From assembly GCF_006345805.1 (NCBI RefSeq), contig NC_042998.1:204662001-204726000 (forward strand): 64,000 nucleotides of DNA. The letters are read 5' to 3'. The position numbers and the translations under genes are program-made. Positions 6,325 through 63,256 of this stretch are shown here, piece after piece. Numbering within the stretch: position 1 is the stretch's first letter; every line of letters begins with the position of its first letter. Source of the stretch: Octopus sinensis. Lineage: Eukaryota. Under the pieces are notes generated by a model. That model did not search any database, was not told the DNA's origin, and worked only from the letters and a program-made list of their open reading frames with translations.

Positions 6325-6454
6325 GAGCGTGTGTGTGTCTGTGTCTTTGTGTATGTATGTGTCTGTGTCTGTGTGTGTGTGTCTGTGTGTGTGTGTGTAT
6401 GTGTCTGTGTGTGTCTGTGTCTCTGTGTGTGTGTCTGTGTGTGTCTGTGTGTGT

Positions 6455-6488
<34 letters not shown>

Positions 6489-6850
6489 CTGTGTGTGTCT
6501 GTGTGTGTGTGTCTTTGTGTGTGTGTGTGTGTGTCTTTGTGTATGTGTGTGTCTGTGTCTTTGTGTGTGTGTGTGTGTCTTTGTGTGTCTGTGTGTGTGT
6601 GTGTGTGTGTGTCTTTGTGTGTGTCTGTGTGTGTCTTTGTGTGTGTCTGTGTGTGTGTGTGTCTGTGTGTGTGTGTCTTTGTGTGTGTGTGTCTGTGTGT
6701 GTGTGTCTGTGTGTGTGCGTGTGTGTGTCTTTGTGTGTGTCTGTGTGTGTGTGTCTGTGTGTGTGTCTGTGTGTGTGTCTTTGTGTGTGTCTGTGTGTGT
6801 GTGTGTCTTTGTGTGTGTCTGTGTGTGTGTCTTTGTGTGTGTGTGTGTAT
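6325..6850. repeat. Compound (GT)n microsatellite punctuated by CT/CTTT
   Basis: Direct reading; source of the spurious VC/HT ORFs. Confidence 0.95.
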
Positions 6851-6857
6851 CTTCTCT

Positions 6858-7777
6858 TTTCACAGCTTCACAGAGGCAATGGTGAAAGACCGAGACCTCT
6901 GGAGATATGCTGTGACTGCGAAGACCCGGCAAATAAAGTGAGTTCACAGCTGTAACCTACACCAGTGTCGCATAACCAACCCCAGCCCACTCAAAGGTAC
7001 CTGGGATCATAGGGTGACCTGCTGTGCTTGAGGAGACCTACTGGGTCAAGTACATCAAAATCAAGATCAAATGGAAATTGTAGTTGTGATCCCTGTGTTG
7101 GTGGCACATAAAAAGCACCATCCAAACGGGGCCAATGCCAGCCTCCTCTGGCCCCTGTGTTGGTGGCACATAAAAAGCACCATCCAAACGGGGCCAATGC
7201 CAGCCTCCTCTGGCCCCTGTGTTGGTGGCACATAAAAAGCACCATCCAAACGTGGCCGATGCCAGCCTCCTGTGATCCCTGTGTTGGTGGCACATAAAAA
7301 GCACCATCCAAACGGGGCCAATGCCAGCCTCCTCTGGCCCCTGTGTTGGTGGCACATAAAAAGCACCATCCAAACGGGGCCAATGCCAGCCTCCTCTGGC
7401 CCCTGTGTTGGTGGCACATAAAAAGCACCATCCAAACGTGGCCGATGCCAGCCTCCTCTGGCCCCTGTGTTGGTGGCACATAAAAAGCACCATCCAAACG
7501 GGGCTGATGCCAGCACTGCCTTGACTGGCTTCTGTGCTGGTGGCATGTAAAAAATGCCAACTGATTGTGGTCGTTGCCAGCTTCCTCCAGCCCCTGTGCA
7601 CCCACTACACTCTCAGAGTGGTTGGCATTAGGAAGGGCATCCAGCTGTAGAAACACTGCCAGATCAGATTGGAGCCTGGTGCAACCTCCTGGCTTCCCAG
7701 ACCCCAGTCAAGCCATCCAACCCATGCCAGCATGGAAAACAGACATTAAACGATGATAATGATGATGATGATGATGT
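6858..7777 (+). mobile_element. RTE 3' end and tail containing an expanded 62-bp array
   Basis: ttcacagaggcaatggtgaaagaccgagacctctggagatatgctgtg matches the RTE 3' ends at 29.0-29.6 kb and 63.7-64 kb; ends cattaaacgatgataatgatgatg. Confidence 0.85.
7091..7524 (+). repeat. 62-bp minisatellite, 7 homogenised copies plus a degenerate eighth
   Basis: Unit ccctgtgttggtggcacataaaaagcaccatccaaacg(g/t)ggcc(a/g)atgccagcctcct... starts at 7091, 7153, 7215, 7277, 7339, 7401, 7463. Confidence 0.95.
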
Positions 7778-11022: not shown

Positions 11023-12469
11023 TTCAAACTGCTGCCTTTTCAATGGACAATAATTCGACAAGATATAAATATATTTATATATTTTTTCTCTCCTTGTTTT
11101 TTCTGCGTCCCTTTCTGTAGGAGGTAGGAGAGCGTAGGCTCGAAACATAAAAGACTTTTTCAATTCCTGAGCGTTATACTAATACATCTGTTTGTTTTGT
11201 ACACCACCTGTCTTCGTCTTTTGTTTTTTTTTGTAAACTCTCCCTATATATATATATATGAATGTGTATATATATATATATATATTTACTTCTTCAGTCG
11301 GTTTACTAGAAGACCTGTCATGTGATCGCTTGACTTGCTGAAACCAACCAACTGCAGTCTGATAGCTTTTAACAGACGACAGAAGACACATCCAGCCAGT
11401 GTAGGTGCCTCCATGTGGTTTCCCAACCTGCTAAAAACAGCAGCCAAATTGCCTTCAAATCACAACCATCTGTCTTTAAAGAAAAGTTATTTTGGGTGAT
11501 GCACACTTTGATGTGTAATTCCAAAAACTGACTGGTTGGTCATATCTGGATTGTCTTCCATCACATATCTATGTAATTAAGATTGAGCTGGGTCTAAACA
11601 TTGTCTGATAAATAATGAACTGCCAGGTCCTTCACTATTTGGAGAATCTGTTAATAAGAATATCCCAAGGTTTCAATTAATTATATGACTAATTAATAAC
11701 CAGTTCGTTAGCTCAAGGTTGACAATTACTCAGGAAATTACTTGTTTCTGAAAATTTATGGAACTACAATTCATTCTGCATGTGACACAGCCACCTCTGT
11801 TGCAGAAGTGTCAAACCAATTCCAGAATCCAAGACATCTCATTCTATGAATGGTAGGCTGTTCAGCATCGCCTGTTCAACATCAACAGTTTGTGTGAAGT
11901 AACATTAGAAGTTGTTGCTATGACAACTACAAATTTAAGTCTTCAGAACCAGTAATAAAATGCAAATAAAATGTGAAATATCCAAGAATAATTAGTCATG
12001 TGACCAATGGATTATTCCATATTGTCTGTGGATATTGTTACTGTGCAAAACAACAGAAGAAGATCGATTATGGAACCCAGAGTTTTGTCGTAATTTTGTT
12101 TGAGTTATAATTGTTTAATGACTTCACCTGACATCATTTGTTGGATCCGGTCAAGCGGAACTCTCATTTGAGCCATTTAAAAACCACACTGCCATCATAT
12201 TGGTTGTAATCCACCACAGAAGCACAACAGTTCTGTGATGTTTTAACAAGGACTCTACTGTTCTTTGCATCTTTTGTTTGTTTCAGTCACTGGACTGTGG
12301 CCATGCTGGAGCAACACCTTTATTTAGCCTGGTACTTATTCTATCAGTCTCTTTCACCAAACTGCTATGTTACAGAAACATAAACATGCTAACATTGGTT
12401 GTCAAATGCTGGTGAGGGACAAACACACACACATGCTGGGCTTCTTTCAGTTTTTGTCTACCAAGCATC

Positions 12470-12700
12470 ATCCGAATGTGATCGATGCCAGGCCCGCCTG
12501 ACTGGCTCCTGTGCCAGTGGCATGTAAAAAGCACCCACTACACTCTTGAGAGTGGTTGGCATTAGGAAGGGCATCCAGCTGTAGAAACACTGCCAGATCA
12601 GATTAGGGCCTGGTGCAGCTGCTGGCTCTTCAGACCTCAGTCAAATCATCCAACAAATGCCAGTATGGAAAATGGATGTTAAACAATGATGATGATGATG
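12470..12700 (+). mobile_element. RTE-tail element
   Basis: ggcatgtaaaaagcacccactacactc...gatgttaaacaatgatgatgatgatg. Confidence 0.85.
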
Positions 12701-13155
12701 AAATTCACTCTCAAGGCTTTGGTCGGTCCGAGGCTATGGAAGAAGACACTTGCCCAAAGTGTCATGCAGTGGGATTGAACCTGGAACCATGTCTGCACCA
12801 ACCACATGGTTCCAGGTTCAGTCCCACTGTGTGGAACCTTGAGCAAGTGTCTTCTTCTATAGCCTCGGACCGACCAAAGCCTTGTGAGTGGATTTGGTAG
12901 ACGGAAACTGAAAGAAGCCTGTCATATATATGTATATGTATATATGTGTTTGTGTGTCTGTGTTTGTCCCCCCAACATCGCTTGACAACTGATGCTGGCA
13001 TGTTTACGTCCCCGTAACTTAGCGGTTCAGCAAAAGAGACCAATAGAATAAGTACTAGGCTTACAAAGAATAAGTCCTGGGGTCAATTTGCTTGACTAAA
13101 GGCAGTGCTCCAACATGGCCACAGTCAAATGACTGAAACAAGTAAAAGAGTAAGA
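12701..13155. mobile_element. tRNA/CORE-like SINE (+, 12798-13155) preceded by an inverted copy of its own 5' part (12701-12792)
   Basis: 92-bp arms around an 11-nt spacer; about 10 mismatches by hand count. Confidence 0.85.
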
Positions 13156-16770: not shown

Positions 16771-17866
16771 TATTTAGTCTGGTTTCTTATCATTTCTTAT
16801 CATGTGTCGTTGCCTGGCAACCTGTGTCAAGTGCCATCACATCTCAAATGTCAGATTCTTCTCTTCTACCTCAACACTGTCACTAATCCTATTCCAATCT
16901 TTAGACATTTCTTATATTGGCTCTTTGAAGCGTTCCATTCATAAGCAGTGGCCACTATAGCTGTATAAATATTGCTGTATTGTTGTTGTTGTTTTAACTG
17001 GAGGATTAAATTGTTGATAAGCTTACTTCCCAATCACGTGGACTTGGGTTCAGTCCTACTGCATGGCACCTTGACTTAAGGGTCTTCTGCCGTACCCCCA
17101 AGTTGACCAAAGCCCAAAGAGCTGATTTAGTTGATGGAAATTGTGACAGAAGCAAATGGTAGCATTTATCCCCACTAAAAATGGATGTTGTTTTAGAACA
17201 CAGAAAACTGCAGGAGCCACCATGAGAGAACCTTTTGGTGCATATAAGCACTCTCGTTTATATTGTTAGCAGGAGATAATCAGCTACTATTGCTGCTGGG
17301 ACCACCAGATCATGTGATTTCAGCCTTCTTTGCCTTTGTCAGTGGTAGACATCCAAAGCTAGAGATAGCAGTAGTTCGTCCATCAATGATATACATAGAA
17401 TCTTGGTACCTAATCAGGCTCTGGTACTGCAAATAGCACATGGGATTATTAAAGAATAATGGCTACAGAAGCAGTATTAGTACCAAAAGATAATATTTAG
17501 GCTGTTAAAGCCCTTTGTATGTGTGTTTGCATGGACCCTTGTGTTGACATCCCATGATTGTTGTAAAAGAGCATCCCCGTCATACAAGTGGGGTTGTCCA
17601 TTCCCAGTCTTCTGTGAAAAACGTGTCTGGCCATGGGGAAATATTACCCTGTTTGGAAGTAGGGTTGGCAACAGGTAGAGCATCCAGTTGTAGACAAATC
17701 TGTCACAACAAATTCCCTATGACCCCTACAAGAATGGAAAGAAAGTGGACATTAAAATCTTTCAACTGTAGTGTTGTTGTTGTTATTGTTGTTGTTGTTA
17801 AGATTAAATTGTTTTTATTTTTTGTTTTTGTTCTTCAGATTCATTTGAAAGAGAGAATTAGTCACC

Positions 17867-18035
17867 ATGAATGACCCACCTCCTCCATATCCCGGTGCAC
17901 CTGGAGCTTCCTATCCTCTTCCTGAAAAGAGTGGCATTCAACCATCAGCCCCAGGAGCATACTATCCAGCCGCTCCTTACCCCACGGCACCTGATATGCA
18001 ACCCCCACCCCCACAACCAATGATGCACCCACAAG
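17867..18035 (+). CDS. LITAF: LITAF-domain gene, first coding exon (exon starts 17839 with 28 nt of 5'UTR); proline-rich N-terminus with PPPY, PSAP and PTAP motifs
   Basis: Acceptor ttgttcttcag at 17838, ATG in the context gtcaccATG, peptide MNDPPPPYPGAPGASYPLPEKSGIQPSAPGAYYPAAPYPTAPDMQPPPPQPMMHPQ, donor G|gtaagt at 18036 (phase 1). The symbol denotes the LITAF/CDIP1 family; orthology was not tested. Confidence 0.9.
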
Positions 18036-19067: not shown

Positions 19068-22000
19068 ACACACACACACACATGCACATCCTCACACACA
19101 CACACACATCCTCACACACACACGCACATCCTCACTCACACACACGCACATCCTCACACACACACATTCACATCCTCACACACACACGCACATCCTCACA
19201 CACACACGCACATCCTCACACACACATGCACATCCTCACACACACACGCACATCCTCACTCACACACACGCACATCCTCACTCACACACCCACACACACG
19301 CACATCCTCACTCACACACATTCACATCCTCACCACACACACACACACACATCCTCACATCACACCACACGCACATCACTCACACCACACATCCTCACAC
19401 CCACACCACACACTCACACACACACCATCCTCCTCACTCACACACACCACACACCTCACACACACACACACATTCACACACACACACACACCTCACTCAC
19501 ACACACGCCACATCCTCACCACACACATTCACATCCTCACACACACACATCACATCCTCACACACACACACGCACATCCTCACTCACACACACACACACA
19601 CATCCTCACACACACACATTCACATCCTCACACACACACGCACATCCTCACTCACACACATTCACATCCTCACTCACACACATTCACATCCTCACACACA
19701 CACGCACATCCTCACACACACACACGCACATCCTCACACACACACATTCACATCCTCACTCACACACACGCACATCCTCACTCACACACATTCACATCCT
19801 CACTCACACACATTCACATCCTCACACACCACACATTCACATCCTCACACACACACACGCACATACTCACACACACCACATGCACATCCTCACACACATG
19901 CACATCCTCACACACACACGCACATCCTCACACACACCCGCACATCCTCACACACACACACGCACATCCTCACACACACACGCACATCCTCACCACACAC
20001 ACGCACATCCTCACACACACGCACATCCTCACACACACACACGCACATCCTCACACACAACATTCACATCCTCACACACACACATTCACATCCTCACACA
20101 CACACGCACATCCTCACACACACACATTCACATCCTCACACACCAACACATCACATCCTCACACACATTCACATCCTCACACACACACGCACATCCTCAC
20201 AACACACATGCACATCCTCACACACAACATTCACATCCTCACACACACACATTCACATCCTCACACACACACGCACATCCTCACACACACACATGCACAT
20301 CCTCACACACATGCACATCCTCACACACACACGCACATCCTCACACACACGCACATCCTCACACACACACACGCACATCCTCACACACACACGCACATCC
20401 TCACACACACACACGCACATCCTCACTCACACACACGCACATCCTCACACACACACATGCACATCCTCACACACACGCACATCCTCACTCACACACATTC
20501 ACATCCTCACACACACACATTCACATCCTCACACACACACACGCACATCCTCACACACACACATTCACATCCCCACTCACACACACGCACATCCTCACTC
20601 ACACACATTCACATCCTCACTCACACACATTCACATCCTCACTCACACACATTCACATCCTCACACACACACACGCACATCCTCACACACACACACGCAC
20701 ATCCTCACACACACACATTCACATCCTCACTCACACACACGCACATCCTCACTCACACACATTCACATCCTCACTCACACACATTCACATCCTCACACAC
20801 ACACATTCACATCCTCACACACACACACGCACATCCTCACACACACACACGCACATCCTCACACACACACATGCACATCCTCACACACACACATGCACAT
20901 CCTCACACACACACACGCACATCCTCACACACACACACACGCACATCCTCACACACACACACGCACATCCTCACACACACATTCACATCCTCACTCACAC
21001 ACACGCACATCCTCACTCACACACATTCACATCCTCACACACACACATTCACATCCTCACACACACACACGCACATCCTCACACACACACACGCACATCC
21101 TCACACACACACATTCACATCCTCACTCACACACACGCACATCCTCACTCACACACATTCACATCCTCACTCACACACATTCACATCCTCACACACACAC
21201 ATTCACATCCTCACACACACACACGCACATACTCACACACACACATGCACATCCTCACACACATGCACATCCTCACACACACACGCACATCCTCACACAC
21301 ACGCACATCCTCACACACACACACGCACATCCTCACACACACACGCACATCCTCACACACACACGCACATCCTCACACACACACGCACATCCTCACACAC
21401 ACACACGCACATCCTCACACACACACATTCACATCCTCACACACACACATTCACATCCTCACACACACACGCACATCCTCACACACACACATTCACATCC
21501 TCACACACACACATTCACATCCTCACACACATTCACATCCTCACACACACACGCACATCCTCACACACACACATTCACATCCTCACACACACACATTCAC
21601 ATCCTCACACACACACATGCACATCCTCACACACACACATGCACATCCTCACACACACACGCACATCACAACAACACGCACATCCTCACACTCACACATT
21701 CATCCTCACACACACACATCACATCCTCACACACACGCACATCCTCACACACACATGCACATCCTCACACTCACACATTCACATCCTCACACACGCACAT
21801 CCTCACACACATTCACATCCTCACCACACATTCACATCCTCACACACACACGCACATCCTCACACACACACATTCACATCCTCACACACACACATTCACA
21901 TCCTCCACACACACATGCACATCCTCACACACACACATGCACATCCTCACACACACACGCACATCCTCACAGACATACGCACATCCTCACACTCACACAT

Positions 22001-25000
22001 TCACATCCTCAACACACACACATTCAACTCCTCACACCACGCACATCCTCACACACACACATTCACATCCTCACACTCACACATTCACATCCTCACAACA
22101 CGCACATCCTCACACACACATGCACATCCTCACACACACACGCACATCCTCACACACACACGCACATCCTCACACACACACATTCACATCCTCACACACA
22201 CACATTCACATCCTCACACACACACATTTCAATCCTCACACACACATTCACATCCTCCACACACATTCACATCCTCCACACACACATCATATCCTCACAC
22301 ACACACATTCACATCCTCACACTCACACATTCATATCCTCACACACACACATTCACATCCTCACACACATATTCACATCCTCACACTCACACATTCATAT
22401 CCTCACACACACGCACATCCTCACACACACATGCACATCCTCACACACACACGCACATCCTCACACACACACGCACATCCTCACACACACACATTCACAT
22501 CCTCACACACACACATTCACATCCTCACCACTCACACATTCATAATCCTCACACACACACATTCACATCTCACACACATTCACATCCTCACATCTCACAC
22601 TCACACATCACATCCTCACACACACGCACATCCTCACACACACATGCACATCCTCACACACACCACGCACATCCCACACACCACACGCACATCCTCACAC
22701 ACACACATTCACATCCTCACACACACACATTCACATCCTCACACACACACATTCACATCCTCACACACACATTCACATCCTCACACACACACATTCACAT
22801 CCTCACACACACACGCCACACCTCACACACACACATTCACATCCTCACACACACACATTCACATCCTCACACACACACATGCACATCCTCACACACACAT
22901 GCACATCCTCACACCAACCCGCACATCCTCACAGACATACGCACATCCTCACACTCACACATTACAACCCACAATCCTCACACACACACACATTCACATC
23001 CTCACACACACGCACATCCTCACACACACATGCACATCCTCACACACACACGCCACATCCTCACACACACACGCACATCCTCACACACACACATTCACAT
23101 CCTCACACACACACCATTCACATCCTCACACACACACATTCACATCCTCACAACACATTCACATCCGCCACACACACACATTCACATCCTCACACCAACA
23201 CATTCATATCCTCACACACACACATTCACATCCTCACACTCACACATTCATATCCTCACACACACACATTCACATCCTCACACACACATATTCACATCCT
23301 CACACTCACACATTCATATCCTCACACACAACGCACATCCTCACACACACATGCACATCCTCACACACACACGCACATCCTCACACACACGCACATCCTC
23401 ACACACACACATTCACATCCTCACACACACACATTCACATCCTCACACTCACACATTCATATCCTCACACACACACATTCACATCCTCACACACACACAT
23501 TCACATCCTCACACTCACACATTCACATCCTCACACACACGCACATCCTCACACACACATGCACATCCTCACACACACACGCACATCCTCACACACACAC
23601 GCACATCCTCACACACACACATTCACATCCTCACACACACACATTCACATCCTCACACACACACATTCACATCCTCACACACACATTCACATCCTCACAC
23701 ACACACATTCACATCCTCACACACACACATTCATATCCTCACACACACACATTCACATCCTCACACACACACATTCATATCCTCACACACACACATTCAC
23801 ATCCTCACACACACACATTCACATCCTCACACTCACACATTCATATCCTCACACACACACATTCATATCCTCACACACATTCACATCCTCACACACACAC
23901 ATTCACATCCTCACACACACACATTCATATCCTCACACACACGCACATCCTCACACACACACATGCACATCCTCATACTCACACATTCACATCCTCACAC
24001 ACATGCACATCCTCACATACACACGCACATCCTCACACACACACACGCACATCCTCACACACACACGCACATCCTCACACAACACACATGCACATCCTCA
24101 TACACACACACGCACATCCTCACTCACACACACGCACATCCTCACACACACACGCACATCCTCACACTCACACATTCATATCCTCACACACACACATTCA
24201 TATCCTCACACACATTCACATCCTCACACACACACATTCACATCCTCACACTCACACATTCACATCCTCACACACATGCACATCCTCACACACACACGCA
24301 CATCCTCACACACACACATGCACATCCTCACACACACACATTCATATCCTCACACACACACATGCACATCCTCACACACACACGCACATCCTCACACACA
24401 CACACGCACATCCTCACACACACACACGCACATCCTCACACACACACATTCATATCCTCACACACACATTCACATCCTCATACACACACGCACATCCTCA
24501 CACACACGCACATCCTCACACACACACATTCACACCCTCACACACACACATTCACATCCTCACACACACACATTCACATCCTCACACACACGCATGCACA
24601 TCCTCACACACACACACGCACATCCTCACACACACACATTCACATCCTCACACACACACATTCACATCCTCACACACACACATTCACATCCTCACACACA
24701 CACATTCACATCCTCACACACACACATTCACATCCTCACACACACGCATGCACATCCTCACACACACACATTCACATCCTCACACACACACATTCACATC
24801 CTCACACACACACACACACATCCTCACACTCACACATTCACATCCTCACACACACACATTCACATCCTCACACACACACACACACATCCTCACACTCACA
24901 CATTCACATCCTCACACACACACATTCACATCCTCACACACACACATTCACATCCTCACACACACAGACACACATCCTCACACTCACACATGCACATCCT

Positions 25001-25398
25001 CACACACACACGCACATCCTCACACACACACATCCTCACACACACACACGCACATCCTCACACACACACCATTCACATCCTCACACACACACCATTCACA
25101 TCCTCACACACACACACACACACATCCTCACACTCACACATGCACATCCTCACACACACACACATTCACATCCTCACACACACACATCCTCACACACACC
25201 ATTCACATCCTCACACACACACCATTCACATCCTCACACACACATTCACATCCTCACACACACACATTCACATCCTCACACACACACACACACATCCTCA
25301 CACTCACACATGCACATCCTCACACACACACGCACATCCTCACACACACACATCCTCACACACACACACGCACATCCTCACACACTCACACACACATC
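19068..25398. repeat. 6.3-kb CA-rich satellite with unit (CG/TT/TG)CACATCCT(CA)n, about 20-24 bp, in LITAF intron 1
   Basis: Direct reading; variants CATATCCT (distal) and CCTCACTCA (proximal). Confidence 0.97.
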
Positions 25399-26375: not shown

Positions 26376-26405
26376 AATATGGACCAGCTCCCCTTGGTGG
26401 CCAAG
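26376..26405 (+). CDS. LITAF: LITAF gene microexon 1 (30 nt, phase 1-1): (E)YGPAPLGGQ
   Basis: Long pyrimidine tract ending tttaatctatttcag|AATATGGACCAGCTCCCCTTGGTGGCCAAG|gtaact; frame-preserving and compositionally matched to the flanking exons. Confidence 0.8.
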
Positions 26406-26559: not shown

Positions 26560-26940
26560 CCAAACTTACATTTTCATCCACGGCATGTAAAAACCACCAA
26601 CTGATCGTGGTCGTTGCCAGCCTCCCCTGGCACCTGTGCCGGTGGCACATAAAAAGCACCATCCATACGTGGTCGATGCCAGTGCCACCTTGACTGGCTT
26701 CCGTGCCAGTGGCATGTAAAAAGCACCAACCAATCGTGGCCGTTGCCAGCCTCCCCTGGCACCTGTGCCGGTGGCACATAAAAAGCACCCATTATACTCA
26801 CAGAGTGGTTGGCATTAGGAAAGGCATCCAGTTGTAGAAGCTCTGCCAGATCAGACTGGAGCCTGGCGCAGCTTCCTGGCTTCCCAGACTCCGGTCAAAC
26901 CGTCCAACCCATGCTAGCATGGAAAACGGACGTTAAACTT
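26560..26940 (+). mobile_element. RTE-tail element with about 60-bp subrepeats
   Basis: gtgccggtggcacataaaaagcacc units; ends ggacgttaaac. Confidence 0.85.
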
Positions 26941-28374: not shown

Positions 28375-28755
28375 ATATTTGTTTCAGCCACGGCCATGCT
28401 GGGGCACCACCTTGAAGAGGTTTTACTCAAATGAATCAACCCCAGGACTTATTTTAAGCCTAGTACTTATTCTATCAGTCTTTTGGGTTGAATCGCTAAG
28501 TTATGGGGATGTAAACACACCAACACCGGTTGTCAAGCAGTGGGGGTGGGGTGGACAAACACAGACAAGAACACACATGCATATACATATAGATGATGAT
28601 GGGCTTCTTTCAGTTTCTATCTACCAAATCCACTTACAAGCCTTTGGTTGGCCCGAGGCTATAGTAAAAGACACTTGCCCATGGTGCCGTGCTGTGGGAC
28701 TGAACCTGGAACCATGTGGTTGGGAAGCAAGCTTCTTACCACACAGCCACATGGT
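28375..28755 (-). mobile_element. tRNA/CORE-like SINE, near full length
   Basis: gtttcagccacggccatgctggggcacc...gacacttgccc...gggactgaacc...cttaccacacagccac. Confidence 0.85.
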
Positions 28756-28949
28756 TTGAGGGGAAACTGAAAAAACAAGTTTCCAAGAATTTCAAATGAC
28801 TTTTTCTTCTATACAGATTAGCAGTCGTTGTTTTGTGTAGAACGGTAGAAGCAGCTAGCAGTTATTTGCAATTAACAGCTAATTACAATTAACTATAATT
28901 CATGTAACCTCGTTTGTCATCAATTCATTAATCAGGGGTCAGAATTAAT

Positions 28950-30505: not shown

Positions 30506-30538
30506 CTTGGATTCCTCCTCCTCCACCTCCTCCTCATG
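30506..30538 (+). CDS. LITAF: LITAF gene microexon 2 (33 nt, phase 1-1): (A)WIPPPPPPPH
   Basis: ttttcttctaattcctgtctttcag|CTTGGATTCCTCCTCCTCCACCTCCTCCTCATG|gtaagt; strong acceptor and donor, frame-preserving. Confidence 0.75.
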
Positions 30539-32751: not shown

Positions 32752-32769
32752 CCTGGGCCCCTCCTCCAG
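32752..32769 (+). CDS. LITAF: LITAF gene microexon 3 (18 nt, phase 1-1): (A)WAPPP
   Basis: ttgttacccaacag|CCTGGGCCCCTCCTCCAG|gtaagt; perfect donor, weaker pyrimidine tract, GC-rich island in AT-rich intron, frame-preserving. Confidence 0.72.
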
Positions 32770-37158: not shown

Positions 37159-37185
37159 GTTATGGGCCGATGCCAACAGCTCCGG
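37159..37185 (+). CDS. LITAF: LITAF gene microexon 4 (27 nt, phase 1-1): (G)YGPMPTAP, containing a PTAP motif
   Basis: ctattttatatttttag|GTTATGGGCCGATGCCAACAGCTCCGG|gtaagt; frame-preserving. Confidence 0.82.
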
Positions 37186-40494: not shown

Positions 40495-40830
40495 TCATCA
40501 TCGTTTAACGTCCGTTTTCCATGCTGGCATGGGTTGGCCAGTTCAACCGGGGTCTGGTAAACCATGGAGGCTGCACCAGGCTCCAGTCTGATCTGGCAGT
40601 GTTTCTACAGCTGGATGCCCTTCCTAACCCCAAACCACTCCATGAGTGTAGTGGATGTTTTTTACGTGCCACCGGCACAGGGGCCAGTCAAGGTGGCGCT
40701 GGCATCGACCACGTATGGATGGTGCTTCTTATGTGCCACCGGCACAGAAGCCAGTCAAGGCGGCGCTGGCATCGGCCACATTCGGATGGTGCATTTTACG
40801 TGCCACCGGCACAGGTATCACAACTACAAT
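40495..40830 (-). mobile_element. RTE-tail element with subrepeats
   Basis: catcatcatcgtttaacgtccgttttccatgctggcatgggttgg...tttacgtgccaccggcac. Confidence 0.85.
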
Positions 40831-43119
40831 TAGTTCTTGGTATAAGCAGAAGAGATGGGATGGTCACTGCTGAGTTGGGTTTGGTCTTAGGCTGGCTGGA
40901 CCAAGATTGACTTGGAACTAGACAACAACTGGGACAGTCCACTCATGTCATTGCCTGGTACACCTGGTAATGAGTGATTGAGTGGATTAAAGTTCAAAGT
41001 TTAATTGTTGTTAATGACTTACGAGCTATGGTCAATTGATTGTCTTCAAGAGAGGTCATGGCATTGAGTTGGTGGTCAGCCAATAACTGGCATTTCTTTC
41101 TCTGTCAGAAGTCTTCAGCCTCTGCTTTTTAGTCATTGTACTGTGGCCATGATGGAGCACCACCTTCAACAGACTTACTCATGTTGACCTCTGGCCCTTA
41201 TTTCACTGCGGTCCTTATCTGAACACAAACCTCATGCAATAGGTTCCCCACTTGTAGAACGAATCCCTTTATTCCCATCTAAAGTAACAGCTTCCTAAAC
41301 ATGTTTTCATTTGTCCTTTCATTGGTTAAAATACTTTGCAACATCTGCTAATTAAGTCACCTAGGTAACGAAGCTACTCTTAGGGAATCCTCTGAGCATT
41401 CACAAAGATTCATTTCATAAATACTCTTAATTTAACGAGTACTCTTATTAGAACTAACAACCCCTCCTACACATTTACTACAAACTCTTGTGTTTATCAG
41501 CCGACCTTTGATCCCACTTTATAACTTGTTGTTCACCCCTAATTTCATGTTGGGTTCACCGCATGGAATTGACCAAAACCTTGAAGCTGTTGCCCCAGTA
41601 ACTGAAAGCAATAAAAGAATTGTCTGACACAGGAAGACATCCTTCAAGAATTCCACTTTGACTCTTTAATATTTGAACCAGCCATATTTGGCTAAAAATA
41701 CCCTGACCCTTTTATGTTCAAATTCGCCAGATCTGGTCTCTCACACTGACCCTACAAAGTCATTCTAAAAATAAATCACAACACTGAAATATCAAAGCTA
41801 TAAGATAAAGCATGATTAACTGTAAACAATGAGAATGGATAATGATTGTCTTTGACAAAAGGTTAACGACATCAATAACCTATAGAGATATTTCTACCTC
41901 TCTATCTGTGATTATAACGAAGCTGTTTGTTAATTAGTTACTAGTAACTTTTACTAAAAGAAAGCAAGTATTAAAGTCTACACTTAATTATGACTTAATT
42001 AAGGGTGACACAGAAATGTCTGCAAGTCTTCCTGAATTTCACTGGAAATTCCTGAATGAAGAATCCTCCTTGTTAAATGGTTCATCAATTCTAAAATCTG
42101 CTGAGATTTCTATCAGAAAAATAAACAGTTTTGCAAGAATTTTAAGGAGTTTCCGTCTGCACCCGTTGAGTTGTATGCCACCACTCCACCTCCACACACA
42201 CACACACACACAGAGGAAGTCCCCTAATGAGATAACTTTTGTTGTTTACTGATGACGATCAAAACTAAACAAGAAAATAGGTGAAACTAATTAACATTTA
42301 ATTACTAATTAGGCTTAATTCTTGATTATAATGTCAGAAATCTTTTATATACAGAGAGAGAGAGAAGTAAATGCTTTTATTTTCTCTCTTCTTTTCTCTC
42401 TCATTCTCTCTTTGGAATTTGACTTATTACACCCCCATCCGCATCACTTCCACCCCATCCGCATCACTTCCACCCCACCACCACCCACACCACCACCCAC
42501 ACATATTTTCTCATTGGGTTTTCTTGGTTTCTTTCTGCAGATTCTCTTCTTCATCTAATTTTGTTATCATTTCTGATTTTTAATTAATTTTTCTTTTATT
42601 TCTTTTAACTTTGATATATTTCCTTACGTGGATGTAAATCTGTGTGTGTGTGTGTGTGTGCTTGCATACACACACACACACAAGTGTGAAGTGCTGACAT
42701 TGCTGTTTGGTGTGGAATTTCAATTCCCAGTCGCATTGCTTTGGGTTCTGTTCCACTTCATGTCACCTTGTGTAGGGGGCCTTGCACTTTAACCCCTTAG
42801 TATTCAAACAGCCATATCTGGGGCCCAAGTATTCTCTCTGTTTTATGTCCAAACTGTTATGATCAGGCTTCTCACACCTACCCTACAATCTCGTTCTTGA
42901 AAATCTCAGATATGAGAAAATTGAAATCCAGTGCCGCCTGACTGGCTCCCTTGCCAGTGGCACATAAAAAGCACCCACTACACTCTTTGAAGTGATTGAC
43001 CCTAGAAAGGGCATTCAGCCGTAAAAACCATTCCAAAGGAGACCCTGGAACTTGGTGCAGTCGCCTGACTTGTTGGATGCTGTCAACTCATCCATTTCCT
43101 GAAAGATGAGGATGCATAC

Positions 43120-43805
43120 ATCATCATCATCATCATCGTTTAACGTCCGTTTTCCATGCTAGCATGGGTTGGACGGTTCAACTGGGGTCTGTGAAGCCAG
43201 AAGGCTTCATCAGGTCCAGTCTGATCTGGCAGTGTTTCTACGGCTGGATGCCCTTCCTAACGCCAACCACTCCGCAAGTGTAGTGGGTGCTTTTTACGTG
43301 CCACCCGCACAGGAGCCAGACGGAGCTGGCAAACGGCCACAAACGGATGGTGCTTTTACAAGTATAGATACACATGCAACGTACCTCAATTTAAGTACCT
43401 AATTCAATTGAATCTTATCATCATCGTTTAACATCCGTTTTCCATGCTGGCATGGGTTGGAGGATTTGACTGGGGACTGGCAGGACAAGAGGCCGCAGCA
43501 GGCTCCAATCTGACCTGGCAGTGTTTCTACAGCTGAATACCCTTACTAATGCCAACCACTCCGAGAGTGTAGTGGGTACTTGCCACTGGCATTGGAAATA
43601 AATATATATATATAATCATCTCATCATCATTTACTGTCTGCCTTCCATGCTGACATGGGTTGGATGGTTTGACAGGAGCTGGCCAGGCAGAGAACCACAC
43701 TAGGCTCCAATGGTGTGTTCTGGCATGGTTTCTACAGCAGGATGCCCTTCCTGATGCCAACCACTCTGAGAGTGTAGTGGGTGCTTTTTATGTGGCACCA
43801 GCACT
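43120..43805 (-). mobile_element. Three tandem RTE-tail copies (about 43120-43350, 43418-43590, 43618-43805)
   Basis: Each begins (atc)n gtttaac.tccgttttccatgc and contains gccaaccactc.gagagtgtagtgggt. Confidence 0.85.
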
Positions 43806-45025: not shown

Positions 45026-45194
45026 TGCTCCCACAGACGACCGTTGTCATCCAGCAACACCCACAGATTTTGCACTTTGGTGAATCCTCCGTACAAACTC
45101 GTTGCCCCAAGTGTAACGCTGACATCATGACAAGTATCCATTATGAAACTGGTAACCTCAGCTGGGTCATTTGCCTCCTCCTCAGTTTCTTTGC
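45026..45194 (+). CDS. LITAF: LITAF domain exon, N-terminal half: first CxxC (CPKC) and start of the hydrophobic segment
   Basis: tctctttgattgcag| acceptor (phase 1), (V)LPQTTVVIQQHPQILHFGESSVQTRCPKCNADIMTSIHYETGNLSWVICLLLSFF, donor GC|gtaagt at 45195 (phase 2). Confidence 0.93.
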
Positions 45195-47945: not shown

Positions 47946-48054
47946 TTGTATTTGTGGCTGTTGCTTAATTCCATTCTGCATGGATAGTACCAAAGACATT
48001 GTCCACACATGTCCAAACTGTTCTCATTTTATCGGCCGTTATTCACGCCTCTGA
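47946..48054 (+). CDS. LITAF: LITAF domain terminal coding exon: end of hydrophobic segment, HxCxxC and stop
   Basis: ttttcttttctttccag| acceptor (phase 2 matches), (A)CICGCCLIPFCMDSTKDIVHTCPNCSHFIGRYSRL then TGA at 48052-48054. The spliced total is 555 nt = 184 aa + stop. Confidence 0.93.
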
Positions 48055-48063
48055 GATACCACC

Positions 48064-48125
<62 letters not shown>

Positions 48126-48964
48126 ACCAAAAGGAACAAAAGACAAAACCTGAAATTATTTCAAAAACTCAAGTGGTCAGTTAAAACTGACCGATAGGTT
48201 TAAGATATCCTGTGACAAATTACTGGCACTTCTTCTTTCCTCCTCCAGCTCTTCCCATCCAGTTCTTCTTCTTCTTCATGCTGTCGTCTCTCCATATTCA
48301 ATGTCTGCCTTACATAATTTATATAGACTTTCTGTTTATTTTTTATTTGTAACAGCCCCCCCTCTCTCTCTCTCAACAATAGTTGGTGGGTTGGTAACAG
48401 GGAACACTTGCCCTAAAGATCATTCCTACAATTACAAAACTTGACACTAATCCTTAGCCCTATTCACCCAGCTGTTCCCTATGCTGCAGCCTGGGCAACT
48501 TAGCGTTACCCTACTCAAACTAAATTATATACATAAACATTCACACTCTTTAATACAGTAATTAACCTCCAGTATGGAGATGAATATTTCTTAACTTACT
48601 AATGAATCATACAACTAATGATTATGTTATGCAAATGAAGGACTCTGATCCTTTTTCCAGTTACAGTTCACATGGTGAAACTTAGTGTGTGTTTATGTGT
48701 GTAGATAGATAGATAGATAGATTCATAAACAGTATATGTATGTGCATGTATGCATCTATGGTGTATCAGATACATAGATAATGGTATTCCTTTGTATCAT
48801 ATGAAACTATATTGCTAAATTTAACTCCTGTAGATGTACGGTTATGATTGTGTTCCTTCATTACTCTTCTAATCAGGCATAATTTAACATACATCTCCAT
48901 ACATAAATACATGTGTATGTGGTGTGTGTGTATATATATTTATATATATAATTTAATGTACAGA

Positions 48965-60997: not shown

Positions 60998-61366
60998 GGA
61001 GTAGGAGTGGCTGTGTGATAAGTAGCTTGCTTACTAACCACATGGTTCTGGGTTCAGTCCCAGTGCGTGGCACCTTGGGCAGGTGTCTTCTACTATAGCC
61101 TCAAGCTGACCAAAGCCTTGTGAGTGGATTTGGTAGACGGAAACTGAAAAGAATCTCGTCATATATATATATATGTATTTGTGCGTCTGTGTTTGTCCCC
61201 CAACATCACTTGACAACCGATGCTGGTGTGTTTACGTCCCCATAACTTAGCAGTTCGGCAAAAGTACTAGGCTTACAAAGAATAAGTCCTGGGGTCAATT
61301 TGCTTGACTAAAGGCAGTGCTCCAGCATGGCTACAGTCAAATGACTGAAACAAGTAAAAGAGTAAG
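60998..61366 (+). mobile_element. tRNA/CORE-like SINE, near full length
   Basis: ggagtggctgtgtgataag...gggttcagtccc...ggcaccttgggcaggtgtcttc...gaaacaagtaaaagag. Confidence 0.85.
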
Positions 61367-62856: not shown

Positions 62857-63256
62857 GGTGCAGGAGTGGCTGTGTGGTAAGTAGCTTGCTAACCAACCAC
62901 ATGGTTGCGGGTTCAGTCCCACTGCGTGGCATCTTGGGAAAGTGTCTTCTGCTATAGCCCCGGGTCGACCAATGCCTTGTGAGTGGATTTGGTTGACGGA
63001 AACTGAAAGAAGCCTGTCGTATATATGTATATATATATGTATGTTTGTGTGTCTGTGCTTGTCCCCCTAGCATTGCTTGACAACCGATGCTGGTGTGTTT
63101 ATGTCCCCATCACTTAGCAGTTCGGCAAAAAGAGACCGATAGAATAAGTACTAGGCTTACAAAGAATAAGTCCCGGGGTCGATTTGCTCAACTAAAGGCA
63201 GTGCTCCAGCATGGTCGCAGTCAAATGATAGAAACAAGTGAAAGAGTGAAAGTGAA
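62857..63256 (+). mobile_element. Full-length tRNA/CORE-like SINE
   Basis: ggtgcaggagtggctgtgtggtaagtagc...gcgggttcagtccc...internal TA/TG tract...gaaacaagtgaaagagtgaaag. Confidence 0.9.

What the first reader, a model, noticed from the sequence alone, without database searches (positions are those of the whole stretch)
37159..37185. A 27-nt microexon adds a third P(S/T)AP late-domain motif
Seen: the first coding exon has PPPY (aa 5-8), PSAP (26-29) and PTAP (39-42), and microexon 4 encodes GYGPMPTAP. Established: PPxY binds NEDD4-family WW domains, P(S/T)AP binds the TSG101 UEV domain, and mammalian LITAF uses both motif types. Inference: inclusion of this exon tunes ESCRT-I avidity by placing an extra PTAP next to the membrane-bound domain.
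Basis: partly seen in the sequence, partly recalled or inferred. Interest (0 to 1): 0.7.

Follow-up and report, generated by a model that had tools for sequence, protein, structure and literature searches.

The report
Octopus LITAF microexon carrying a PTAP motif
The 27-base exon is real and gives an octopus LITAF-type endosomal membrane protein a third PTAP docking motif, but every annotated isoform contains it, so it looks like a fixed part of the protein and the splicing choice falls on two neighbouring microexons.

Summary
Window 37159-37185 is a 27-nt, phase 1-1 exon with AG and GTAAGT flanks that encodes GYGPMPTAP. It is the last of four consecutive microexons (30, 33, 18 and 27 nt) in an octopus LITAF/CDIP1 homologue. 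The spliced products are identical to Octopus sinensis RefSeq isoforms X1-X3.

Three P(S/T)AP motifs are far more than composition predicts (shuffle P = 4.5e-5). The third motif is kept in Argonauta hians as PSAP, despite three synonymous changes and one T-to-S change. It is absent from cuttlefish and every other LITAF homologue retrieved.

The idea that inclusion tunes avidity is not supported. All 10 annotated isoforms from three Octopus species contain this exon, as does a cDNA-derived GenBank entry. No isoform lacking it is in the protein collection. The variable exons are the 33-nt and 18-nt microexons upstream. The 18-nt exon, joined to this one, creates a PPGY (PPxY) motif three residues before the PTAP.

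The most likely reading is a constitutive, membrane-proximal ESCRT-I (TSG101) docking site that arose in octopods. Binding was not tested. This is an ordinary family member with a neat detail, of modest interest.

The parts
17867..18035 (+). Coding part of the first coding exon (56 codons plus 1 base, ends in phase 1). It encodes MNDPPPPY... with PPPY (aa 5-8), PSAP (aa 26-29) and PTAP (aa 39-42). A likely acceptor AG at 17837-17838 implies an untranslated exon further upstream.
   Evidence: 98% identical to O. vulgaris P0001 and 100% identical to O. sinensis P0071. The donor is AAG|GTAAGT. The upstream acceptor is inferred from sequence only.
26376..26405 (+). Microexon A, 30 nt, phase 1-1, encodes EYGPAPLGGQ. 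It is present in all annotated isoforms.
   Evidence: Flanks are tttcAG| and |GTAACT.
30506..30538 (+). Microexon B, 33 nt, phase 1-1, encodes AWIPPPPPPPH. It is a cassette exon: absent from the 167/169-aa isoforms and from the O. bimaculoides 175-aa isoform.
32752..32769 (+). Microexon C, 18 nt, phase 1-1, encodes AWAPPP. It is a cassette exon, absent from the 178/179-aa and 167/169-aa isoforms. Its last residues plus the first two of microexon D form PPGY (a PPxY motif). It has the weakest polypyrimidine tract of the array (0.53).
37159..37185 (+). Microexon D, the finding itself. 27 nt, phase 1-1, encodes GYGPMPTAP. It is present in every annotated isoform.
   Evidence: Orthologous exons are in O. 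bimaculoides L001 17272-17298 and Argonauta L002 14213-14242.
37173..37184 (+). The PTAP codons (CCA ACA GCT CCG), the third P(S/T)AP motif. It lies 30 residues before the first CxxC.
   Evidence: Argonauta has CCT TCA GCC CCT = PSAP.
45026..45194 (+). Exon encoding the linker VLPQTTVVIQ... and the first half of the LITAF domain (the CPKC zinc knuckle and the start of the hydrophobic segment). It enters in phase 1 and leaves in phase 2.
47946..48054 (+). Last coding exon. It holds the rest of the hydrophobic segment, the HTCPNC knuckle and the stop codon TGA (48052-48054).

Best explanation
The window carries the Octopus sinensis LITAF/CDIP1 homologue. This is a small protein with a C-terminal zinc-ribbon and hydrophobic LITAF domain that anchors it in endosomal membranes, and a disordered, proline-rich cytosolic N-terminus that carries short docking motifs.

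Between the first coding exon and the LITAF-domain exon lies an array of four phase-1 microexons, each ending in G. The array probably arose by duplication of GYGP/AWxPPP-type units.

The 27-nt exon at 37159-37185 is the last of the four and appears to be constitutive. It places a P(T/S)AP motif in the flexible linker about 15-25 residues before the folded domain. I infer that this motif acts as a third, membrane-proximal binding site for the UEV domain of TSG101 (ESCRT-I), alongside the two P(S/T)AP motifs and the PPPY of exon 1. Together they would raise local ESCRT-I recruitment.

Alternative splicing acts on the two preceding microexons (33 and 18 nt), not on this exon. Those two exons change the length of the proline spacer. 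The 18-nt exon also creates a junction-spanning PPGY (WW-domain ligand type) three residues upstream of the PTAP.

Shown here: exon anatomy, isoform content, conservation, motif enrichment and predicted disorder. Inferred: TSG101 and WW-domain binding, and any effect of the splice variants.
For: Gene identity: PF10601 at E = 3.4e-25. The best homologues are Octopus LITAF proteins, and the spliced products are identical to O. sinensis X1-X3.

Exon array with canonical sites and uniform phase.

The exon is in 10 of 10 annotated isoforms of three Octopus species, including GenBank entry AUR53648.1. The isoforms differ only in microexons B and C. PMC5736919 lists an O. vulgaris Litaf sequence, MF467267. 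No D-less isoform is in the collection.

The motif is non-random: P(>=3 motifs) = 4.5e-5.

Purifying selection on the motif: Argonauta keeps P-S-A-P with three synonymous changes plus T-to-S, while the two residues just before it changed. Argonauta also keeps three motifs in total, even though exon 1 is rearranged.

Accessibility: the AlphaFold2 model gives pLDDT 44-59 for residues 1-100 and above 90 for the LITAF domain.

Precedent: mutating the human SIMPLE/LITAF PSAP impairs its endosome-to-lysosome trafficking function, and that paper cites earlier work showing the mutation abolishes TSG101 binding (PMC3514783). PPSY binds NEDD4 WW domains, and the N-terminus is flexible and independent of the LITAF domain (PMC5142333).

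PPGY exists only in isoforms that contain microexon C, and it is conserved in O. bimaculoides and Argonauta.
Against: No binding data exist for any cephalopod LITAF. The octopus TSG101 UEV pocket was not examined here.

'Constitutive' rests on annotation-level isoforms (RefSeq and ENA models plus one cDNA). There are no junction read counts, so low-level or tissue-restricted skipping would be invisible.

In cuttlefish, microexons at the equivalent position just before the LITAF exon are clearly alternative, so skipping is mechanistically plausible.

The third motif is absent from cuttlefish and from all other molluscan and vertebrate homologues retrieved. It is therefore not needed for basic LITAF function.

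P-x-x-P in a region that is 38% proline could serve other proline-recognition domains.

Intron flanks of the exon are no better conserved than background between two Octopus species. That is neutral evidence.
Confidence: 0.6

Rival explanations
1. The 27-nt exon is a regulated cassette exon, and its inclusion or skipping sets the number of P(S/T)AP motifs (3 versus 2) and so the avidity for ESCRT-I.
For: The exon is 27 nt and phase 1-1, so skipping keeps the reading frame. Its neighbours B and C are true cassette exons. Cuttlefish LITAF transcripts vary by one to three 21-nt units just upstream of the LITAF exon (species from PMC11917092).
Against: None of the 10 annotated isoforms in three Octopus species lacks it, and the cDNA-derived GenBank entry contains it. 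Eight exon-less sequences are absent from the protein collection. The donor is a consensus GTAAGT. The flanking introns show no extra conservation of the kind typical for regulated microexons.
Confidence: 0.15
2. The PTAP is a by-product of a Pro/Ala-rich low-complexity linker. The exon serves only as a flexible spacer between the N-terminal motif cluster and the membrane anchor, and has no specific partner.
For: The N-terminal region is 38% proline and 13% alanine. Cuttlefish and all other homologues lack a motif at this place. The homologous units elsewhere are plain GYGPPPP or GMYGPPxG repeats.
Against: Three motifs are about 30 times the expected number of 0.09 (P = 4.5e-5). The motif survives in Argonauta with three synonymous changes and one motif-preserving change, while adjacent residues diverged. 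The total of three motifs is also preserved in Argonauta.
Confidence: 0.17
3. The segment MPTAPVLP acts as a generic PxxP ligand for SH3 or another proline-recognition domain (for example in ESCRT-0/STAM-type partners) and not for the TSG101 UEV domain.
For: PTAP is itself a PxxP, and it is followed by VLP, which gives PxxPxxP. Human SIMPLE also binds STAM1 directly (PMC3514783).
Against: The T-to-S exchange in Argonauta is exactly the one tolerated by the P(S/T)AP consensus, and the A and both P positions are invariant. The same protein has two further canonical P(S/T)AP motifs.
Confidence: 0.08

Closest known systems
Human LITAF/SIMPLE
   Same: It has a C-terminal LITAF domain (CxxC, a hydrophobic stretch, HxCPxC) and a flexible proline-rich N-terminus. 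That N-terminus carries PPxY (NEDD4 WW ligand) and P(S/T)AP (TSG101 UEV ligand) motifs, and the two kinds lie close together.
   Different: In human LITAF the paper describes the P(S/T)AP as overlapping the first PPSY (residues 20-23), so it sits far from the anchor. To my knowledge it is a single motif and the N-terminal region is not split into microexons. Octopus has three motifs, the third only 30 residues from the first CxxC and carried on its own 27-nt exon. Its proline-rich region is cut into four microexons, two of which are alternative.
[quoted passage not shown]
   Same: It is the paralogous LITAF-domain protein. The fish CDIP1 hits carry an N-terminal PPPY followed by PSAP, and CDIP1 interacts with ESCRT-I (PMC7865452).
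   Different: In the fish sequences retrieved, the PSAP sits 126-160 residues upstream of the CxxC. ESCRT-I contact in CDIP1 is bridged by ALG-2 according to that paper. No membrane-proximal motif was seen.
Cuttlefish (Sepia esculenta) LITAF orthologue, transcripts P0003-P0006
   Same: About 63% identical, with the same PPPY start, the same GYGP-type units ending in G, and a microexon-like modular linker just before the LITAF exon.
   Different: It has no P(S/T)AP at all and instead has two PPGY motifs. The three 21-nt GMYGPPxG units are alternatively included, giving 169/176/183/190-aa isoforms.
Argonauta hians LITAF orthologue (P0002)
   Same: The same gene structure, with the orthologous last microexon encoding GYGSVPSAPA. 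It has three P(S/T)AP motifs and a junction PPGY.
   Different: It has five microexons instead of four (an extra AWVPPPQ unit). The last microexon is 30 nt. The motif is PSAP instead of PTAP. The exon 1 motifs are rearranged.
Regulated (for example neuronal) cassette microexons
   Same: The size is 30 nt or less, the length is a multiple of three, and the exon encodes a short surface or linker peptide that alters an interaction motif.
   Different: No isoform without the exon is known, and the flanking introns show no elevated conservation. The description fits microexons B and C better than D.

Membership tests
LITAF/CDIP1 family (Pfam PF10601, zf-LITAF-like) | Significant match to the LITAF-like zinc-ribbon domain profile | tested here: met
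   88.4 bits against a cut-off of 23.8, E = 3.4e-25, covering profile positions 2-69 of 70. All 70 homologues retrieved carry PF10601.
LITAF/CDIP1 family (Pfam PF10601, zf-LITAF-like) | CxxC knuckle, a hydrophobic segment of about 22 residues, then an HxCPxC knuckle | tested here: met
   CPKC, then LSWVICLLLSFFACICGCCLIPF, then HTCPNC. C119, C122, H169, C171, P172 and C174 are invariant in 42 homologues. The model places a helix at residues 136-152.
LITAF/CDIP1 family (Pfam PF10601, zf-LITAF-like) | Zinc binding and monotopic insertion into endosomal membranes | not testable with these tools
   Shown for human LITAF only (PMC5142333 and PMC5095921).
P(S/T)AP ligands of the TSG101 UEV domain ('late-domain' type motifs) | The tetrapeptide P-[ST]-A-P is present | tested here: met
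   PTAP at codons 37173-37184, residues 89-92 of the 184-aa isoform.
P(S/T)AP ligands of the TSG101 UEV domain ('late-domain' type motifs) | The motif lies in a disordered, accessible, cytosolic segment | tested here: met
   The AlphaFold2 model gives pLDDT 51-59 for residues 81-100, with no secondary structure before residue 116. This is a prediction only. The cytosolic location is inferred from human LITAF topology.
P(S/T)AP ligands of the TSG101 UEV domain ('late-domain' type motifs) | The motif is conserved in orthologues beyond what neutral drift allows | tested here: inconclusive
   It is kept in three Octopus species and in Argonauta (three synonymous changes plus T-to-S). It is absent from cuttlefish and from all other homologues. 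It is therefore conserved within Octopoda only.
P(S/T)AP ligands of the TSG101 UEV domain ('late-domain' type motifs) | Direct, motif-dependent binding to the TSG101 UEV domain | not testable with these tools
   This needs a pull-down, ITC or NMR. The octopus TSG101 sequence was not retrieved.
Alternatively spliced cassette microexon | A very short exon with canonical splice sites and a frame-preserving length | tested here: met
   27 nt, AG|...|GTAAGT, phase 1-1. Skipping keeps the reading frame.
Alternatively spliced cassette microexon | Transcripts or isoforms exist both with and without the exon | tested here: not met
   All 10 annotated isoforms contain it. Eight exon-less sequences are not in the collection. 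This is an annotation-level test only, and read-level data were not available.
Alternatively spliced cassette microexon | Elevated conservation of flanking intron sequence | tested here: not met
   Identity between O. sinensis and O. bimaculoides is 0.79 in the 100 nt upstream and 0.74 in the 100 nt downstream. The intronic background has a median of 0.73 and an upper quartile of 0.89. The introns cannot be aligned to Argonauta. The two Octopus species are close, so the power of this test is low.

The most novel reading that the evidence does not exclude
Octopods turned the last GYGP-type repeat microexon of LITAF into a membrane-proximal P(T/S)AP site. The neighbouring 18-nt cassette microexon works as a splice-controlled switch. 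Only when it is included does the exon-exon junction spell PPGY, three residues before the PTAP. This would build a composite WW-ligase/ESCRT-I docking module next to the membrane anchor, functionally like the adjacent PSAP and PPSY of human LITAF but assembled by splicing. Isoform choice (ABCD and ACD against ABD and AD) would then decide whether NEDD4-type ligases and ESCRT-I compete or cooperate at that site.
Probability: 0.25. Interest if true: 0.5.

Novelty: new member of a known kind. Interest (0 to 1): 0.3.

Why it matters
If the third motif does bind TSG101, octopus LITAF would be a natural example of a host membrane adaptor with several ESCRT-I docking sites, one of them very close to the membrane. 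That would be useful for asking how the number and spacing of motifs affect ESCRT recruitment. The microexon array shows how short docking motifs can be born (a GYGPPPP-type unit becoming GYGPMPTAP) and assembled across exon junctions (PPGY) in a disordered linker. None of this changes what is known about the LITAF family in general.

Tried and rejected
A permissive tblastn of P0001 and P0002 against the window located the microexons but was mostly noise. I confirmed the boundaries by reading the sequence.

My first gene model joined exon 1 directly to microexon D. It matches no known isoform and I dropped it.

A three-way DNA alignment around the exon misaligned Argonauta because the introns are not alignable. 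I replaced it with an exon-only comparison.

Flanking-intron conservation between the two Octopus species did not discriminate between constitutive and alternative exons.

A sequence search of the PDB found no solved LITAF-domain structure.

A whole-window repeat search was swamped by the intron 1 minisatellite. ARAGORN found no tRNA-like genes. Long ORFs in the window are repeat artefacts, and I recognised no second gene.

A literature search for LITAF plus microexon returned nothing. A search for PTAP plus alternative splicing returned only retrovirus-budding papers.

I considered retrieving octopus TSG101 with a large protein search. I did not run it. The prior that ESCRT-I is present is very high, and vertebrate clusters would probably have filled the output.

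Full report
**What is at the coordinates**

Window 37159-37185 is GTTATGGGCCGATGCCAACAGCTCCGG. It sits between a pyrimidine-rich ...tatatttttAG acceptor and a consensus GTAAGT donor. Read in phase 1, it encodes GYGPMPTAP. The PTAP codons are at 37173-37184.

The first coding exon runs from the ATG at 17867 to 18035. It encodes MNDPPPPYPGAPGASYPLPEKSGIQPSAPGAYYPAAPYPTAPDMQPPPPQPMMHPQ.

**The gene**

Downstream exons at 45026-45194 and 47946-48054 encode a LITAF domain: CPKC, a hydrophobic stretch, then HTCPNC. The assembled protein matches Pfam PF10601 at E = 3.4e-25.

A search of the large protein collection returned Octopus LITAF homologues as the best hits. Mapping the O. vulgaris protein back onto the window revealed three more microexons that the simple model had missed:
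- A: 26376-26405, 30 nt, EYGPAPLGGQ.
- B: 30506-30538, 33 nt, AWIPPPPPPPH.
- C: 32752-32769, 18 nt, AWAPPP.

The finding is therefore microexon D, the fourth of an array. All four exons are phase 1-1 and end in G. Introns of 2.2-8.3 kb separate them.

The spliced combinations ABCD, ABD and AD are 100% identical to O. sinensis RefSeq isoforms X1, X2 and X3. The window is therefore O. sinensis or something indistinguishable from it.

**Is it more than chance?**

- I scanned the 27 kb between exon 1 and the LITAF exon for in-phase, stop-free AG...G|GTRAG mini-exons. Apart from an extended-acceptor version of B, the only proline-rich candidates were B, C and D. A has a GTAACT donor, which that pattern does not cover.
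- The N-terminal 92 residues are 38% proline and 13% alanine. The expected number of P[ST]AP motifs is still only 0.09. In 200,000 shuffles, three or more occurred with frequency 4.5e-5, and a motif fell within the last nine residues with frequency 0.006.

**Conservation**

- The orthologous loci of O. bimaculoides (L001) and Argonauta hians (L002) have the same exon at the same place, with the same phase.
- O. bimaculoides differs by one synonymous base.
- Argonauta belongs to a different family of incirrate octopods. Its exon is 30 nt and encodes GYGSVPSAPA. Within the motif, three codons carry synonymous changes and the fourth changes T to S. That is the one substitution the P(S/T)AP consensus allows. 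The two residues in front of the motif changed from PM to SV.
- Argonauta also keeps three P(S/T)AP motifs in total, although its exon 1 is rearranged.
- Outside Octopoda the third motif is absent. Transcripts with 63% identity have no P(S/T)AP at all. One of them comes from a Sepia esculenta RNA-seq run (SRR31864756, listed in PMC11917092).
- Among the 79 LITAF-family sequences on hand (the hits plus the Octopus isoforms), no protein outside the octopods has a motif closer than 45 residues to the first CxxC. In octopods the distance is 30-32 residues.

**Is the exon alternatively spliced?**

The 90% identity cluster of the Octopus protein has 10 members. They come from O. vulgaris, O. sinensis and O. 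bimaculoides. One of them is AUR53648.1, a GenBank LITAF entry from O. vulgaris. A study of the O. vulgaris gastric ganglion lists an O. vulgaris Litaf sequence, MF467267 (PMC5736919).

Aligned, the 10 members fall into four patterns:
- ABCD: 184/185 aa.
- ABD: 178/179 aa, including AUR53648.1.
- ACD: 175 aa, O. bimaculoides only.
- AD: 167/169 aa.

Microexon D is present in all ten. Only B and C vary.

I looked up the exact sequences of eight D-less combinations, using both the O. sinensis and the O. vulgaris alleles, plus the D-only and ACD forms. None is in the collection.

The splice sites fit this picture loosely. D has a consensus donor. C, the shortest cassette exon, has the weakest polypyrimidine tract (0.53). 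Intron flanks of D are no better conserved between the two Octopus species than the intronic background (0.79 and 0.74 against a median of 0.73). This is neutral to mildly against a regulated microexon.

These are annotation-level data. None of the Octopus cluster members lists Logan as a source, so no transcript assemblies bear on this. Rare or tissue-restricted skipping cannot be excluded. It is mechanistically plausible: in cuttlefish, transcripts identical elsewhere differ by a clean 63-nt block of three 21-nt GMYGPPxG units directly upstream of the LITAF exon, and intermediate isoforms of 176 and 183 aa exist.

**What alternative splicing does change**

Including or skipping B and C changes the length of the proline spacer between the exon 1 motif cluster and the PTAP, by 11 and 6 residues. 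The last residues of C (APPP) joined to the first residues of D (GY) spell PPGY, a PPxY-type motif, three residues before the PTAP. PPGY is present only in the ABCD and ACD isoforms.

The same junction motif exists in O. bimaculoides and Argonauta. PPGY motifs also recur in the cuttlefish protein.

This is the more interesting splice-dependent feature. Its function is untested.

**Mechanism**

Human LITAF/SIMPLE binds TSG101 through its PSAP. Mutating PSAP to ASAA impairs its role in endosome-to-lysosome trafficking (PMC3514783). Its first PPSY binds NEDD4 WW domains. The P(S/T)AP overlaps that PPSY. The proline-rich N-terminus is flexible and independent of the LITAF membrane anchor (PMC5142333).

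An AlphaFold2 model of the 184-aa octopus isoform, built on a 42-sequence alignment, gives pLDDT 44-59 for residues 1-100 and above 90 for the LITAF domain. The first strand starts at residue 116. The third PTAP (residues 89-92) therefore sits in a predicted disordered linker, about 15-25 residues from the folded domain. That makes it accessible in principle.

I conclude, by inference, that the exon supplies a constitutive, membrane-proximal ESCRT-I docking site that arose in the octopod lineage from a GYGPPPP-type repeat unit.

The rivals are listed with their weights in the report sections:
- a functionless low-complexity by-product;
- a generic PxxP ligand.

**Comparison with known families and novelty**

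The gene meets the sequence-level criteria for the LITAF/CDIP1 family. The motif meets the sequence criteria of a TSG101-type P(S/T)AP ligand. Binding itself was not testable here. As a cassette microexon it fails the one defining test available, because no isoform lacks it.

The gene and its isoforms are already in RefSeq. I found no paper that mentions LITAF microexons.

This is a new, uncharacterised member of a known kind, with a tidy evolutionary detail. Interest is modest.

**Limits**

- No read-level RNA-seq was available.
- No binding assay was possible.
- Octopus TSG101 was not retrieved.
- The Octopus species are closely related.
- Only one non-Octopus octopod and one decapodiform orthologue were available.

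Noticed in passing
window 19071-25398 (intron 1 of the LITAF gene); related array at 6329-6848: A 6.3-kb minisatellite: about 299 copies of a 22-bp unit, CACACACACACATGCACATCCT, at 86% matches. It causes extreme strand skew (GC skew down to -0.93). The orthologous O. bimaculoides intron is only about 1.6 kb and holds a plain (AC)39 microsatellite, so the array looks like a lineage-specific expansion from an AC repeat. An inverted, roughly 70% complementary GT-rich array lies upstream at 6329-6848.
   Followed up: partly
window 32752-32769 joined to 37159-37164: The junction of the 18-nt cassette microexon with the PTAP microexon encodes PPGY, a PPxY-type motif. It exists only in isoforms that include the 18-nt exon. 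It is conserved in O. bimaculoides and Argonauta.
   Followed up: partly
L003 432-1004, L004 322-831, L005 1453-1962 (cuttlefish transcripts): LITAF transcripts, one from a Sepia esculenta RNA-seq run, are identical except for a 63-nt block of three 21-nt units (GMYGPPxG) just before the LITAF-domain exon. Proteins of 169, 176, 183 and 190 aa all exist. This points to an array of alternative 21-nt microexons. These proteins have no P(S/T)AP motif.
   Followed up: partly
L002 3874-14242 (Argonauta hians locus): Argonauta has five linker microexons instead of four (an extra AWVPPPQ unit of 21 nt) and a 45-nt first unit. All are phase 1 and end in G, which is consistent with growth of the array by unit duplication.
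   Followed up: partly
window, many sites, e.g. 7000-7650, 12463-13018, 26582-26938, 28500-28800, 40500-40950, 43135-43575, 61007-61246, 62866-63113: Two families of SINE-like interspersed repeats of about 250-320 nt occur on both strands, with at least 14 and at least 40 blastn hits. One family contains internal 62-nt tandem sub-repeats. They produce recurrent spurious ORFs such as ...CPRC.A.GLN.EPCGWEA....
   Followed up: partly
P0010, P0027, P0014 (Dreissena polymorpha isoforms X11, X9, X3) and similar series in Mya, Mercenaria and Ruditapes: RefSeq isoform series of bivalve LITAF-domain proteins differ by short GY/PQ-rich blocks (for example GYAPQYG) in the same linker position. Modular, alternatively spliced mini-exons in this linker may be a general molluscan trait.
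   Followed up: no
window 48070-48130: An (AT)n microsatellite starts about 20 nt after the stop codon, in the presumed 3' UTR.
   Followed up: no
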